Virus record (IMG/VR): IMGVR_UViG_3300050821_002957 | Coordinates: 1 to 64,000 of that record | Reading direction: 5' to 3' (one strand) | DNA length: 64,000 nt | Shown: in pieces, positions 17,790 to 56,019 of the stretch | How the letters are laid out: each line of letters begins with the position of its first letter | Numbering within the stretch: the stretch's first letter is position 1 | Notes under the pieces: model-generated | What the model saw: the letters and a program-made list of their open reading frames with translations, nothing else | What the model was told of the DNA's origin: nothing | Databases searched by the model: none | Translations under genes and position numbers: made by a program

Positions 17790-18150
17790 AAATCCACACT
17801 ATCTGTCCAAGGTGTTGAATGGTGTTTCTGTTGCCAAAGAAGAATTAGAAGAAGCCGAACGGAAGCGAGACCAGTTTTTAGAGCCTATCCTTACGATTCT
17901 AGGAGCAACCGGAGGCGGCATTGATTCTGTTTACCAGCACGATGAAATTCTCTTTGTAAACAGAACAGGAAGTTGTCGAGGATGTCGTTGGGACGATGAC
18001 TACGAGTTTCCGATGTCCATCTTCACTGCTGATGATCCAATTGCGGCTGCACACAAATACGTCATTGAGAAAAAAGCAGCCGAAGCTGAAGCGGAGAAAC
18101 AACGAAAACTAGCGGAAATTCAACGCTTACAAAAAGAACTAGGTGTCTGA
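17782..18150 (+). CDS. Hypothetical protein
   Basis: 122 aa with charged C-terminal helix. Confidence 0.7.
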   Translation: MSRNPHYLSKVLNGVSVAKEELEEAERKRDQFLEPILTILGATGGGIDSVYQHDEILFVNRTGSCRGCRWDDDYEFPMSIFTADDPIAAAHKYVIEKKAAEAEAEKQRKLAEIQRLQKELGV

Positions 18151-34802: not shown

Positions 34803-34809
34803 TATTTAG
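34803..34809 (-). promoter_or_regulatory. Late promoter CTAAATA
   Basis: Upstream of g18; contains TAA stop of the endonuclease. Confidence 0.7.
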
Positions 34810-35318
34810 AGGTTTGAAGCATTTGCGGTGACAGCTATATTGGTGGAAACCAAAATTTGAGCGAACTCCAACAATTCGTTGTGAGTGTTCTCTCCTTTTG
34901 CTGAGTTATAAATCCAAACCACAAGTCTGACGTTTGTTTTTGTATATCCTTTTGCCGGATCTTCACGATCAAGCGATGGAGCATATTTATTCTTTGCTGT
35001 CGCCGCTGACTCAAAATCAAAAGCTATGCCAGTCACGTCACACTTACCAGCTTGAAGTTTGGGTAGAAGCCACTCGAATGTAAGATCAAATGGAACTCCA
35101 ATTTTCTTAGCTCGACTTTCTGCGTTATACAATAATCGTTTTGCCCTTCGGTCCAAAGATGTCAAATTTACTCTTTTCAATTTTTTATATGAAGGTTGAC
35201 TTCTTTTTGACAAACGGAAGGCTTCCATTTCAACTTCTGTCACTGGTAAACCCTTCCGCAGCTTTACTCCGGTAGAATATTCAGATTTTCCTTTATAGGG
35301 TTTACATTTGCGTATCAT
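34806..35318 (-). CDS. HNH-like homing endonuclease
   Basis: NAESRAKK, GKCDVTG..F, APSLDRED..KGYT..NVRLVVWIYN.AK. Confidence 0.8.
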   Translation of the reverse strand: MIRKCKPYKGKSEYSTGVKLRKGLPVTEVEMEAFRLSKRSQPSYKKLKRVNLTSLDRRAKRLLYNAESRAKKIGVPFDLTFEWLLPKLQAGKCDVTGIAFDFESAATAKNKYAPSLDREDPAKGYTKTNVRLVVWIYNSAKGENTHNELLEFAQILVSTNIAVTANASNL

Positions 35319-36994
35319 AACCTTGGACCCCAGTTAGTATCTGGCTCGTCAAATGCCGAAGAGATGAAGCCAAAAGGAACAATGTCTTCTTCGAGTGCAG
35401 CATTATAATCACGTTTTAATTGGCTATACACATCGGTATCAGTCAACTCTTTAAAGTACTTCTGATTGACCAACCATCCAAAATTCACTAGACACATTGC
35501 CAAGTCATCATGCTTACCTTCTTCAGCAGCGTATGAATTCCGCACCGAAATAAACGATGTCAACTCTTGAATGATCTGGTAATCATAAACGAGCAGCTTG
35601 TCCGCTTCGATCAACGTCTTCAAGTTGCCGCAGCCAATTCGTTTGGTTCCCTTGTTCGAGCGAAGACCAAACTCTACATTCTTAGTGAAGCCGCCGCCGA
35701 CCTGAGTACCTTTTCCCTTCGTCGTCGTCGTAATAATATTCTCGTACTCCTGTTCCATCTGGAGTGACTTCGCAACGTCATTGTCGTTTGTCTCAACCAT
35801 CACGTATGCGCTATTGTATTTAGTCGCTGCCTGAGCTATTACATCCGGGAACAACATGGGGGTAATCTTGTCGGACTGATACTTCGCCACAACCTGATAA
35901 GGCATAGTTGTGATGTCAAAAATGATGAAAGCCGAAGCGTCCAATTCCTTTCCGCCTGCCACGTCCGCTGTCAGAACGTACTGATGTCCATTGGCTGGTG
36001 GAGTGTGAACATCCAGCTTTGCTTCTGAACCATCTATAAACTGCGAATAACGAAGTTGAATGGTGCCTAATGGTGACTTCCATGTCTTCATCATCAATTC
36101 CAATTTGTTATGATCGATGAGAGTGTTGCTTGAACCAATAAATTCGCATTCAAACTCTTGGCGGAATTGAGAATCGCTGGTCAAAGAAATTGTTTTCTGT
36201 TTCCATTTTTGGTCACGCAGTCCAGTGCCGTCAGGTTTGGGAACCATACTCCAATGAATGGCGAACGGTTCATAACCATTCCATTTGATTTGTGGATCGG
36301 GTGAGTTTCGAGGATTATTTGCCTGCGTCCACATGGCGTGAAACATGTTCATACCATTTGGTGTCGAGACGATGATGACCTTTGTGGTTTCACCAGACGA
36401 AATTGTCGGATAGACCGATTTGAAGAAGTCATCGGCAATGTGCGCCGGAACGAATGCGAACTCATCAAGGAAGATCAGGTTGAAAGCGTTACCACGTATT
36501 GCATCGGATGCTGTGGACGATGCCATGATCTTGCATCCGTTCTCAAGTTCGATGTTTCCTTTGTTCCATTCAATGACGCCCTGCTGCATCCACTTCGGAA
36601 TTCCCATGTACGATTTCTTGAGATCGCTGAGGAGCTTCTGGGCTGTCTTGTATTTGTTTGCCAGGATTGCTATGTTCTGCTGCTCTTTGAATAAGATGGT
36701 CCAGAGTAAGAACGCACAAGTAGTAATTGACTTTCCTACCTGACGAGGACACTTGACGATGTTGAATCGGTTATGGACAAACTTAAGAACCATCTTCTCT
36801 TGAAAGTCGTACAACTCGAAAGGAATCTCGCCTCGATCTACGTTCACGATCTTGACGTAATGTTTGATGAAGTAAATTGGATCTTCCGAACACTTCTGAT
36901 ATTCTGTTAGCTGCTGTAATGTAAACTGCTGACTGACGCCTTCTGCCTTGAGCTTCGGATTTCCAAGGTAAGACGTTGAGGTACTTCTAGGCAT
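35315..36994 (-). CDS. g17: Terminase large subunit (T4 gp17 family)
   Basis: CPRQVGKS Walker A, IFLDEFAFV, IIVSTPNG, FRQEFECEF.GS, DVAGG, HDDLAM. Confidence 0.97.
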   Translation of the reverse strand: MPRSTSTSYLGNPKLKAEGVSQQFTLQQLTEYQKCSEDPIYFIKHYVKIVNVDRGEIPFELYDFQEKMVLKFVHNRFNIVKCPRQVGKSITTCAFLLWTILFKEQQNIAILANKYKTAQKLLSDLKKSYMGIPKWMQQGVIEWNKGNIELENGCKIMASSTASDAIRGNAFNLIFLDEFAFVPAHIADDFFKSVYPTISSGETTKVIIVSTPNGMNMFHAMWTQANNPRNSPDPQIKWNGYEPFAIHWSMVPKPDGTGLRDQKWKQKTISLTSDSQFRQEFECEFIGSSNTLIDHNKLELMMKTWKSPLGTIQLRYSQFIDGSEAKLDVHTPPANGHQYVLTADVAGGKELDASAFIIFDITTMPYQVVAKYQSDKITPMLFPDVIAQAATKYNSAYVMVETNDNDVAKSLQMEQEYENIITTTTKGKGTQVGGGFTKNVEFGLRSNKGTKRIGCGNLKTLIEADKLLVYDYQIIQELTSFISVRNSYAAEEGKHDDLAMCLVNFGWLVNQKYFKELTDTDVYSQLKRDYNAALEEDIVPFGFISSAFDEPDTNWGPRL

Positions 36995-36997
36995 GTT

Positions 36998-37039
36998 TTC
37001 TCCACTTCGTAAACTGTTGATTATTTAGGAAGTGGAGAA
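36998..37039 (-). promoter_or_regulatory. 11 bp hairpin occluding g17 SD, with late promoter CTAAATA (37022-37028) in its loop
   Basis: Minus strand TTCTCCACTTC-CTAAATA...-GAAGTGGAGAA-AAC-ATG. Confidence 0.75.
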
Positions 37040-37078
37040 TTTTGCCGTCTATATTTTGACCGTTTTGATATGCGGGAA

Positions 37079-37699
37079 CTACGGTTTTACAAGTTCGATG
37101 AGAGCGATCTGAACTTTAAAAGATGAGGTCGCCGCCGTTGTGAGTGCCGTCAACTCAACAAGATTACTTACAGTCGAATTGAACGCACTCGTGTTACATC
37201 TGTTGTTAAACACAAAATCACTACTGCAAAATCCTGTGGAAACCGGGCCGGATGACAAAGTTTGGAAACTTCCAATGCCATTAGCTGAACTGCCAATCGA
37301 TGTTACTGTGACTACAGATTCAATTTTGAACGGCGCTCCCCCAGTAAAACTATTCAACGGCAAAATTCCTGAGTCAACAATCACAGATCCGGTCAGCGTG
37401 GTAGGTCCGATTCTAAGTTTGAATTGAAAGCTATCAGTGTTGACGATGGTAATAGCTTCACCATGTGCTGTGATGCGATAGGTTGTGCCTACTTGAAACG
37501 TATTGGCCGGAACTGTTGTTGAGAGAACTGAAATCTCCGAATTGGTAACAGTTACAGGCGTCGTGAGTGTGGCTTGACCGGGAAATGATGAAGCTGGTGT
37601 CCATTGTGAAGTGGTAGAATTCCATACCAAAGACTGTTTATTGACCGGAGCAGTTGGTGCTACTGCATTTCCTTGAAGACCAGTAATTGTAATATCCAT
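37079..37699 (-). CDS. Putative virion/fibre protein
   Basis: T/S/G-rich beta-structure composition; AGGAGG SD. Confidence 0.65.
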   Translation of the reverse strand: MDITITGLQGNAVAPTAPVNKQSLVWNSTTSQWTPASSFPGQATLTTPVTVTNSEISVLSTTVPANTFQVGTTYRITAHGEAITIVNTDSFQFKLRIGPTTLTGSVIVDSGILPLNSFTGGAPFKIESVVTVTSIGSSANGIGSFQTLSSGPVSTGFCSSDFVFNNRCNTSAFNSTVSNLVELTALTTAATSSFKVQIALIELVKP

Positions 37700-37721
37700 G
37701 TTTCCTCCTAAATTGCCTTAA

Positions 37722-37728
37722 TATTTAG
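37722..37728 (-). promoter_or_regulatory. Late promoter CTAAATA
   Basis: Contains TAA stop of 37725..39053. Confidence 0.65.
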
Positions 37729-55521: not shown

Positions 55522-56019
55522 TTATTCTTCATCCGTATTTAGGGTCTCTGAAGTAACGTCAATGACCCGAAGAGCATCTTTCAAAGCTCCGTTAGCATTC
55601 AGTTCTTTCATCTGCTTCAATAATTCTCCGGTCGAACCGATAAATACAGCATTATTCTGCGTAATAGTATCTCCACCCGACTTCCCAGATTCACGTTCAA
55701 TCTCTTTCTTGGTTTTCCGTAGACCAATCAGAGCCAAAGCAGTATCTCGGGCTTCTTTTTGTGCCATTGCTGCTGCTTCGACAGACCTAGAGTCCTGTTT
55801 TTCTTTGGCAAAAAAATTGGCATTATCTACCAATTCATTTCCCTTTTCTACTAGATTGTGAAGTGTGCGACGAGCGACATCAAAATCGTATTCCATGTCC
55901 TTGTCGTCATTGCCGGTAGAGACAACTTCAGCAGGTTGGACGGTTACAATCTCTTGTGAGGCTGGCGAAGGTTCCAAATTAAAAGTGGCATCAAGTTTTT
56001 CATTCACTGTTGGTTTCAT
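55522..56019 (-). CDS. g16: Terminase small subunit (T4 gp16 family)
   Basis: DFDVARRTLHNLVEKG, NNAVFIGSTGELLKQM. Confidence 0.85.
   Translation of the reverse strand: MKPTVNEKLDATFNLEPSPASQEIVTVQPAEVVSTGNDDKDMEYDFDVARRTLHNLVEKGNELVDNANFFAKEKQDSRSVEAAAMAQKEARDTALALIGLRKTKKEIERESGKSGGDTITQNNAVFIGSTGELLKQMKELNANGALKDALRVIDVTSETLNTDEE
55536..55542 (-). promoter_or_regulatory. Late promoter CTAAATA
   Basis: Within g16 3' end, upstream of 54458..55519. Confidence 0.6.

What the first reader, a model, noticed from the sequence alone, without database searches (positions are those of the whole stretch)
36995..37039. Terminase RBS locked in an 11 bp hairpin with the late promoter in its loop
Seen: on the minus strand TTCTCCACTTC pairs perfectly with GAAGTGGAGAA, which contains the g17 SD, and the 20 nt loop holds CTAAATA. 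Read-through mRNA would hide the SD, whereas mRNA starting in the loop lacks the 5' arm. Known: T4 uses this logic for e, soc and I-TevI. Inference: here it uncouples terminase dosage from the upstream structural island.
Basis: partly seen in the sequence, partly recalled or inferred. Interest (0 to 1): 0.6.

Follow-up and report, generated by a model that had tools for sequence, protein, structure and literature searches.

The report
Promoter-gated hairpin hiding terminase start

Summary
On the minus strand, 37039..37029 pairs perfectly (11 bp) with 36998..37008, which holds the GGAG 5 nt before the TerL ATG (36994). The 20-nt loop starts with CTAAATA. The fold is far from chance (z -8).

CTAAATA is the commonest 7-mer upstream of genes in this genome. 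The phage encodes gp55, gp33 and gp45 homologues, so a T4-type late promoter in the loop is credible.

- **Predicted effect:** RNA started about 6 nt after the motif lacks the 5' arm. Opening the start region costs about 23 kcal/mol in long RNA and 4 in short RNA.
- **Relatives:** Six of eleven distinct TerL relatives (61-92% identity) have the same layout with different arm sequences. Two bury the SD and four bury the AUG plus codons 2-5, with the 5' arm tracking synonymous codons.
- **This genome:** Only one other of 72 late-promoter genes has such a stem.

I read it as a T4 e/soc/I-TevI-type gate applied to terminase: a new member of a known kind. No start site is mapped. One soil RNA-library contig shows only that a longer form exists. 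Upstream transcription looks late rather than early, which favours dosage uncoupling over timing, but this is untested.

The parts
37029..37039 (-). 5' arm of the hairpin (11 nt), ending at the base just before the late-promoter motif. It is present only in RNA that starts upstream of the g17 promoter.
   Evidence: Sequence; fold; inverted repeat.
37022..37028 (-). CTAAATA, a gp55-type late-promoter box (positions -12 to -6). It forms the first 7 nt of the loop.
   Evidence: Enrichment and placement upstream of late genes; gp55, gp45 and gp33 homologues; box geometry and the Aeh1 variant from PMC2988020.
37009..37028 (-). 20-nt loop, with a weak inner 5-bp helix (UAAAU/GUUUA). The part after the box (ATCAACA..TTA) is conserved in several relatives.
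37014..37018 (-). Predicted late transcription start, 6 nt after the box (about 37016). This is inferred and not mapped.
   Evidence: T4 late-promoter geometry, TATA box at -13..-6 (PMC2988020). RNA from 37016 is unstructured.
36998..37008 (-). 3' arm of the hairpin. It contains the Shine-Dalgarno GGAG (37003..37000), 5 nt before the ATG.
   Evidence: Sequence. GGAG-type SDs occur at other genes of the block. Opening cost is 22.7 kcal/mol in long RNA against 4.0 in short RNA.
35315..36994 (-). g17, large terminase subunit (559 aa), start ATG at 36994..36992.
   Evidence: Pfam Terminase_6N/6C; 50% identity to cyanomyovirus gp17; conserved MPRS N-terminus.
37039..37053 (-). Conserved 15-nt element TATAGACGGCAAAAT abutting the 5' arm, with a degenerate palindrome upstream of it. 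Function unknown.
   Evidence: Alignment of ten leaders. The composite pattern occurs once in the genome. The RNA-library contig ends at 37038.
37079..37699 (-). Upstream 206-aa ORF with no family match. It has its own CTAAATA (37728..37722) and an AGGAGG SD, and is a source of read-through RNA. It is absent at this place in the nearest relatives.
   Evidence: No terminator-like site lies between it and g17.

Best explanation
This is a cis-acting translational gate of the kind T4 uses for genes e, soc, 49 and I-TevI, here placed on the large terminase gene. RNA polymerase carrying the phage's gp55-like factor starts at the CTAAATA box inside the loop, at about 37016. That mRNA lacks the 5' arm, its SD and AUG are free, and TerL is made. 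Any RNA that enters from upstream carries both arms: read-through from the 206-aa ORF, or from the fibre-like and baseplate genes beyond it. Such RNA folds into the 11-bp helix and hides the SD, so ribosomes cannot start on g17. TerL output is therefore set by g17's own promoter alone and not by the flow of transcription from the structural genes upstream. Shown: the helix, its stability, the promoter-like motif and its genome-wide behaviour, the late-transcription genes, and conservation of the pairing with compensatory changes in relatives. Inferred: the start site, the silence of the long form, and the purpose (limiting a nuclease/ATPase needed in small amounts).
For: The helix is real and non-random. 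The late-promoter box is strongly enriched and sits directly before late genes. gp55 (E 4e-19), gp45 and gp33 (PF16805) homologues are present. Predicted short RNA is open, MFE -1.3 kcal/mol; long RNA forms a -19.4 kcal/mol hairpin. The cost to free positions -13..+6 is 22.7 against 4.0 kcal/mol. Relatives: six of eleven distinct TerL relatives show the same topology, with the 5' arm just before the box, the box in the loop and the 3' arm on the start region, but with other arm sequences. L130/131 and L003 bury the SD; L132-L135 bury the AUG and codons 2-5. Their fold z-scores are -3.7 to -7.6. The cognate arm/start-region duplex is the best in 7 of 7 rows and columns, and only 1 of 5040 permutations is as good. 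In the four coding-type leaders, 4 of 14 pairs carry compensatory changes that follow synonymous Pro and Arg codons; covariation is 0.274 against 0.106 in shuffles (2/500) and at most 0.06 when slid. G-U pairs occur on the sense strand (L130, L134), which points to RNA and not DNA. All five members of the window's TerL clade have the hairpin. Within this genome only g17 and one JAB-domain gene stand out among 72 late-promoter genes. No terminator or sigma-70-like promoter lies between the upstream genes and g17. A soil RNA-library contig spans 36810..37038, so a form containing the loop and 10 of 11 nt of the 5' arm exists. T4 precedents are in PMC3014915 and PMC2988022.
Against: No 5' end is mapped. 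The only RNA-library evidence is one 229-nt, low-depth contig that could be DNA carry-over. It shows the long form only and nothing about a loop-initiated form. Five relatives lack a strong stem (L001, L002, L136, L138; L137 has only 6 bp), so the device is dispensable. The T4 cases block early or middle read-through. Here upstream transcription appears to be late, so the biological reason differs and is unproven. The host is unknown, so SD use and helix-opening capacity are assumed. Much of this genome seems to use leaderless mRNAs.
Confidence: 0.7

Rival explanations
1. The helix marks the 5' end of a separate transcript or a processing product. Under this reading the conserved element TATAGACGGCAAAAT just upstream acts as a dedicated promoter, an RNase site or a protein site, so that RNA begins at about 37040. 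The hairpin would then be a 5'-terminal stabiliser or a riboregulator that something must open.
For: The element is conserved next to the variable 5' arm in most relatives and is unique in the genome. The RNA-library contig ends at 37038, 1 nt inside the arm and 3 nt from where a -10-like TATAGA would place a start.
Against: The end of one low-depth contig is not a mapped 5' end. No -35 element is present, and the promoter scan finds nothing there. The element is missing in L132 and L134, which still have strong hairpins. This reading does not explain why the box sits in the loop in every case.
Confidence: 0.1
2. The hairpin acts on the upstream RNA. It would be a U-tract-less terminator or pause site, or a 3'-end stabiliser for the structural-gene transcripts, and the overlap with the g17 SD would be incidental.
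For: The stem lies at the end of an upstream transcription unit. In L130 and L003 it is flanked by A and U runs like a bidirectional terminator.
Against: In the window the stem is followed by AAAACAUG, with no U run, and the loop is 20 nt. The terminator scan is negative. In four relatives the 3' arm is the coding sequence itself and the 5' arm tracks its synonymous codons. That pattern implies selection on covering the start site, not on ending a transcript.
Confidence: 0.07
3. It is a DNA palindrome bound by a dimeric protein that represses the late promoter, as I-TevI does at its own late promoter.
For: The arms flank the promoter box symmetrically. There is a T4 precedent for an operator over a late promoter (PMC2988022).
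Against: Arm sequences differ completely between close relatives while complementarity is kept. G-U pairs are acceptable only in sense-strand RNA. Arm position moves between the SD and the coding region.
Confidence: 0.05
4. It is a chance inverted repeat without function.
For: None beyond the fact that some relatives lack it.
Against: z -8, rarity in random genomes, and conservation with covariation.
Confidence: 0.01

Closest known systems
T4 gene e (lysozyme) leader hairpin with late promoters inside or next to its 5' strand
   Same: A stable helix sequesters the SD/AUG on long transcripts. Transcripts from the proximal TATAAATA-type promoter lack the 5' strand and are translated. Related phages keep the layout (PMC3014915).
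   Different: The T4 long transcripts are early, so that gate is temporal and prevents premature lysis. Here upstream transcription looks late. The gene is terminase, the box is CTAAATA, and nothing is mapped experimentally.
T4 I-TevI, I-TevII, I-TevIII, segB and Aeh1 mobE hairpins (homing endonuclease genes), and T4 soc and 49
   Same: The SD is sequestered and a late promoter is placed so that late RNA cannot form the structure (PMC2988022, PMC3014915). As with the endonucleases, the product here is a DNA-cutting enzyme.
   Different: Those genes are mobile or accessory and lie inside early or middle units. Here the gene is an essential core gene inside the late structural block. Relatives use a variant that buries the AUG of a near-leaderless mRNA.
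T4 and cyanomyovirus g17 expression
   Same: The protein is homologous (34-50% identity), the gene is late, and tail sheath and tube genes lie downstream.
   Different: T4 g17 starts inside g16, with a 17-nt overlap. S-SSM7 g17 abuts an upstream ORF after g16. Neither has a free leader, a promoter-in-loop or a hairpin. In this phage the TerS homologue lies 18.5 kb away.
Aeromonas phage Aeh1 late-promoter consensus
   Same: (a/g)C at -13/-12 in place of TA, which gives a CTAAATA-type box (PMC2988020).
   Different: This is a resemblance of the motif only, taken from the review. It was not tested on Aeh1 sequence here.

Membership tests
T4-type late-promoter-gated start-site hairpin (e / soc / 49 / I-TevI class) | [quoted passage not shown] | tested here: met
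   11-bp perfect stem over GGAG; -27.5 kcal/mol, z -8.0; opening cost 22.7 kcal/mol.
T4-type late-promoter-gated start-site hairpin (e / soc / 49 / I-TevI class) | A gp55-type late-promoter box lies within or next to the 5' strand, so the late RNA lacks that strand. | tested here: met
   CTAAATA occupies the first 7 nt of the loop. The motif is validated by enrichment and position. RNA from the predicted start is unstructured.
T4-type late-promoter-gated start-site hairpin (e / soc / 49 / I-TevI class) | The transcription start is mapped inside the structure. | not testable with these tools
   Only assembled contigs of two soil RNA libraries were available. They cannot show starts.
T4-type late-promoter-gated start-site hairpin (e / soc / 49 / I-TevI class) | Longer transcripts from upstream promoters run through the structure. 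| tested here: inconclusive
   No terminator lies upstream. An RNA-library contig reaches 37038, 22 nt upstream of the predicted late start, but DNA carry-over is not excluded.
T4-type late-promoter-gated start-site hairpin (e / soc / 49 / I-TevI class) | The long transcripts are early or middle, so the gate delays translation to late times. | tested here: not met
   Sigma-70-like sites in the 20 kb upstream are at or below chance (29 against 33 +/- 6). None of the phage's regular early promoters lies on that strand there. Upstream promoters are CTAAATA boxes. This feature concerns purpose rather than mechanism.
T4-type late-promoter-gated start-site hairpin (e / soc / 49 / I-TevI class) | The phage has the gp55/gp33/gp45 late-transcription apparatus. 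| tested here: met
   gp55 homologue E 4e-19; clamp E 1.4e-5; PF16805 coactivator E 6e-9.
T4-type late-promoter-gated start-site hairpin (e / soc / 49 / I-TevI class) | The structure is kept in related phages. | tested here: met
   Six of eleven distinct relatives have it; compensatory changes and a permutation test support it.
T4-type late-promoter-gated start-site hairpin (e / soc / 49 / I-TevI class) | Translation of the long form is reduced relative to the short form. | not testable with these tools
   Only computed opening energies are available.
Intrinsic (rho-independent) terminator | A G+C-rich stem, a short loop, and a U run directly after the stem on the transcribed strand. | tested here: not met
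   The loop is 20 nt and the stem is followed by AAAACAUG. The scan is negative.
Curated RNA families (Rfam 15) | A match to a covariance model at or near its gathering score. | tested here: not met
   The only hit is a 14.6-bit chance match elsewhere, at 37313..37368.
Dispersed promoter/stem-loop cassette or other repeat | The same arms recur at several loci. | tested here: not met
   The arm occurs only as the two halves of this hairpin. One 1-mismatch hit at 18088 is within chance.

The most novel reading that the evidence does not exclude
The hairpin may be one form of a clade-wide, evolutionarily mobile device that makes TerL translatable only from its own promoter. In most relatives it buries the AUG of a near-leaderless mRNA, with the 5' arm tracking synonymous codons. 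The conserved 15-nt element abutting the arm (37039..37053) would then be a dedicated start, processing or protein site that produces the closed form on purpose. The result would be a stored, silent terminase mRNA that is opened or replaced when packaging begins.
Probability: 0.12. Interest if true: 0.65.

Novelty: new member of a known kind. Interest (0 to 1): 0.4.

Why it matters
The mechanism is textbook T4, so the finding does not change how this kind of control is understood. It adds three things.

- **An essential core gene under the gate.** The large terminase is a nuclease/ATPase needed in small amounts. Here it is controlled this way in a clade where g16 and g17 are no longer adjacent.
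- **A natural series of variants.** The same logic is met by different sequences, covering the SD in some relatives and the AUG plus first codons in others. This gives unusually clean compensatory evidence and ready-made variants for reporter tests.
- **A late-on-late setting.** The gate would separate expression levels within one temporal class instead of separating early from late.

It also flags an uncultured 405-kb soil T4-like phage whose early and late genes look largely leaderless.

Tried and rejected
**Searches that gave nothing**
- Near-identity DNA search of the phage collection: no match. The phage is known only from metagenomes. L066 is the same phage on a 321-kb JGI contig with an identical leader, so it is not independent.
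- Rfam: nothing relevant.
- Sigma-70 and terminator scans of the leader and of the 20 kb upstream: at or below chance.
- Arm as a dispersed repeat: rejected.
- TATA[GT]AC as a genome-wide promoter class: rejected. About 31 scattered hits are mostly inside genes, and the composite element is unique.

**Census results**
- Early promoters with the same arm/start-site complementarity: no class-wide excess (Mann-Whitney p 0.16; 6 of 73 below the null 5% point). Only isolated cases stood out.

**Data that could not be obtained**
- L067 (80% TerL) has an intein, and its N-terminus lies outside the locus. The record is not held, so its leader could not be read.
- Four of twelve contig look-ups returned no DNA (P0003, P0004, P0013, P0020).
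- RNA evidence is only two short assembled contigs from soil metatranscriptomes. They cannot give starts, strand or level.

- L135 was folded at the wrong coordinates and redone.
- The L134 start codon was set 6 nt off and corrected.
- Two paper searches failed on term format.

Full report
**What is there.** On the minus strand the leader of the 559-aa ORF 35315..36994 reads as follows: a 5' arm at 37039..37029, a 20-nt loop at 37028..37009 that begins with CTAAATA, and a 3' arm at 37008..36998. Three nt later comes the ATG at 36994. The arms are perfectly complementary over 11 bp. The 3' arm contains GGAG at 37003..37000, 5 nt before the ATG. Other genes of the block carry GGAG-type sites at similar distances. 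The repeat finder reports the same repeat.

The RNA fold is -27.5 kcal/mol against -8.4 +/- 2.4 for shuffles, z -8.0. Perfect inverted repeats of this size number 19 in the whole genome, against 1-6 in random genomes. The arm is not repeated elsewhere.

**Context.** The window is the first 64 kb of a single 405,631-bp virus record rated complete. The ORF is a T4-type large terminase (Pfam Terminase_6N/6C). Its best named relatives are cyanomyovirus gp17 at 50% identity, and no named phage is closer.

- Downstream lie an EndoVII/HNH-like ORF that overlaps the TerL stop, then tail sheath, tail tube and portal.
- Upstream lie a 206-aa ORF with no family match and two Mtd_N-domain fibre-like proteins.
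- The TerS homologue is 18.5 kb away, at 55597..55917.
- T4 g17 overlaps g16, and S-SSM7 g17 abuts an ORF that follows g16. Here g17 stands alone behind an 84-nt leader.

**Is CTAAATA a late promoter here?**
- It occurs 19 times in the window against 4.4 expected. Seventeen lie on the strand of the structural genes, and most of those directly precede ORF starts.
- Genome-wide it is the commonest 7-mer in the 60 nt before genes: 43 genes against 3.1 expected.
- The canonical TATAAATA is not enriched.
- The genome encodes a gp55 homologue (E 4e-19), a sliding clamp and a gp33-type coactivator.
- The review of T4 late transcription places the 8-bp box at -13..-6 and records an (a/g)C variant at -13/-12 in phage Aeh1 (PMC2988020).

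With that geometry the g17 start falls at about 37016, inside the loop. This start is predicted, not mapped.

**Consequence for the RNA.** RNA from 37016 is essentially unstructured: MFE -1.3 kcal/mol, open centroid, z +1.1. RNA from 37040 forms the -19.4 kcal/mol hairpin. Freeing positions -13..+6 around the AUG costs 22.7 kcal/mol in a long transcript and 4.0 in the short one. The stop codon of the upstream ORF (37079) is 40 nt from the 5' arm, so terminating ribosomes should not melt the stem (inference).

**Relatives.** TerL searches gave eleven distinct relatives at 61-92% identity with readable leaders.

| Leader type | Loci | Stem |
|---|---|---|
| Covers the SD and spacer | L130/L131 | 14 bp, one G-U |
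| Covers the SD and spacer | L003 | 12 bp |
| Covers the AUG and codons 2-5 | L132, L133, L134, L135 | 9-13 bp |
| Weak stem | L137 | 6 bp |
| No stem | L001, L002, L136, L138 | none |

- In the six with strong stems the 5' arm ends at the box, an NTAAATA box lies in or at the edge of the loop, and the 3' arm covers the start region. The arm sequences differ from the window's.
- In L132-L135 the AUG follows the box by only 9-16 nt and there is no SD.
- Their 76-nt leaders fold with z -3.7 to -7.6. The five without a strong stem do not stand out: z -0.5 to -1.4 for four, and L001's -2.7 comes from a separate hairpin upstream of the promoter.
- The long/short opening contrast is 13.7-17.3 against 1.3-5.6 kcal/mol.
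- The cognate 5'-arm/start-region duplex is the most stable in all 7 rows and all 7 columns of the cross matrix. Only the identity permutation, 1 of 5040, reaches the cognate total.
- On an alignment of the four coding-type leaders, 4 of 14 pairs carry changes on both sides. These follow the third base of the Pro codon and the first base of the Arg codon. Covariation is 0.274 against 0.106 in shuffles (2/500) and at most 0.06 when the partner is slid.
- The G-U pairs are compatible only with sense-strand RNA.
- On a TerL tree, all five members of the window's clade have the hairpin, with the SD type nested among the coding types. L135 in the sister clade and L003 also have it.

The device is therefore maintained by selection on pairing. 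It can shift its target from AUG to SD, and it can be lost.

**How special is it in this genome?** Among 72 CTAAATA/ATAAATA boxes followed by an ORF, only two pair the stretch before the box with the start region far beyond a permuted null. These are g17 (-23.9 kcal/mol) and a 156-aa JAB/MPN-domain gene at 396129 (-23.5). The rest match the null. It is a gene-specific control and not a by-product of promoter composition.

**RNA evidence.** Two soil metatranscriptome runs hold small parts of the stretch. One 229-nt contig with no mismatch lies on 36810..37038. Its upstream end is 22 nt beyond the predicted late start and 1 nt inside the 5' arm. Another contig lies on 37502..37704, inside the 206-aa ORF and 12 nt short of that gene's predicted late start. 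Contigs cannot give starts or strand, and DNA carry-over is possible. The result shows at most that a form containing the loop and nearly the whole 5' arm exists. It neither supports nor refutes a loop-initiated RNA.

**Timing or dosage?** In T4 the silent long forms are early or middle transcripts (PMC3014915, PMC2988022). Here the phage's very regular early promoter does not occur on the minus strand upstream of g17. Sigma-70-like and terminator-like sites in the 20 kb upstream are at or below chance. The upstream promoters are CTAAATA boxes. So read-through into g17 would be late RNA from structural genes. It remains inference.

**Rivals.**
- A terminator or 3'-end stabiliser for upstream RNA fails on the missing U run and the long loop. 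It also fails because in four relatives the 3' arm is coding sequence tracked by the 5' arm.
- A DNA operator fails on the complete turnover of arm sequence with kept complementarity, and on the G-U pairs.
- A third reading cannot be excluded. A conserved 15-nt element, unique in the genome, abuts the 5' arm, and the contig end at 37038 lies next to it. It could mark a start, a cleavage site or a protein site that yields the closed form. I give this about 0.1.

**Comparison with the known.** It works like the T4 e/soc/49/I-TevI hairpins. On membership, the structural features are met. Start mapping and the translation difference could not be tested. The early-versus-late feature is not met. 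T4 and cyanophage g17 have no equivalent leader. I did not find terminase among the genes listed for this mechanism in the two reviews read. I therefore file it as a new member of a known kind, of moderate interest.

Noticed in passing
window minus strand 60050, 45926, 41742, 31146, 28926, 20843, 8011 (first base of each CTAAATA box): Many late genes have their ATG only 5-9 nt after the CTAAATA box, where the transcript should start, and have no SD. Late mRNAs of this T4-like phage are probably often leaderless. In relatives g17 itself is of this kind (L001: box, 6 nt, ATG).
   Followed up: partly
window plus strand 955, 1452, 12612; genome 66605, 103215, 103723, 150854, 151957, 189800, 405069: A very regular early-type promoter: GATACATCTA abutting TTGAC(A/T), 17 nt, TAnnnT, then ATG after 6-7 nt. 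This again implies leaderless mRNAs. The GATACATCTA box touching the -35 could be an UP-like or activator site.
   Followed up: partly
window 37039..37053 (minus) and the degenerate palindrome up to about 37075: A conserved element TATA(G/T)AC(C/G)(G/A)CAAAAT sits directly before the variable 5' arm in most relatives. In L001 and L137 it is the right half of an 8-9-bp palindrome GGTATATA..TATATACC. It is unique in the genome and its function is unknown. A terminase-related DNA site or a start or processing site are guesses.
   Followed up: partly
window 35816..35823 (minus), inside g17: An internal ACTAAATA box, formed by the codons for T-K-Y of the motif ATKYN, is kept at nucleotide level in 9 of the 11 distinct relatives. 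An in-frame ATG follows 16 nt later (Met399), or 4 nt later in other relatives. This recalls the internal transcription and in-frame products annotated for T4 gene 17.
   Followed up: partly
genome 396096..396131 (L142:4097-4132), plus strand: This is the second clear case of the same architecture. A 9-10-bp stem with G-U pairs has CTAAATA in the loop and GGAGGGG plus the base before the ATG in the 3' arm. It precedes a 156-aa JAB/MPN-domain protein.
   Followed up: partly
genome 159744..159784 and 160005..160044, plus strand: Two 12-13-bp perfect palindromes at early-type promoters have the -10 hexamer in the loop and the ATG with the first codons in the 3' arm. This may be the same gating logic at early promoters, or DNA operators. 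There is no class-wide excess.
   Followed up: partly
window 55522..56019 (minus): The small terminase (gp16) homologue (E 6e-18 to S-SSM7 gp16) lies 18.5 kb upstream of g17. In T4 and cyanophages the two genes are adjacent or overlap.
   Followed up: yes
window 37079..37699 and 34806..35318 (minus): The 206-aa ORF before g17 and the 170-aa EndoVII/HNH-like ORF overlapping the g17 stop are both absent at these places in the nearest relative, L130 (92% TerL). There the Mtd_N gene directly precedes g17 and the sheath gene directly follows it. S-SSM7 has a small 'endonuclease VII' gene at the same place after g17.
   Followed up: partly
L067:1100-1800; proteins P0003, P0007: Some relatives carry a LAGLIDADG-type intein in the TerL ATPase domain, giving proteins of 876 and 880 aa with PF14528.
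   Followed up: no
genome 191676..191997 (L143), plus strand: The gp33-type late coactivator gene (97 aa, PF16805) has its own CTAAATA box. A possible pairing exists between the pre-box stretch and its start codon (duplex -19 kcal/mol), which hints at late autoregulated expression.
   Followed up: no
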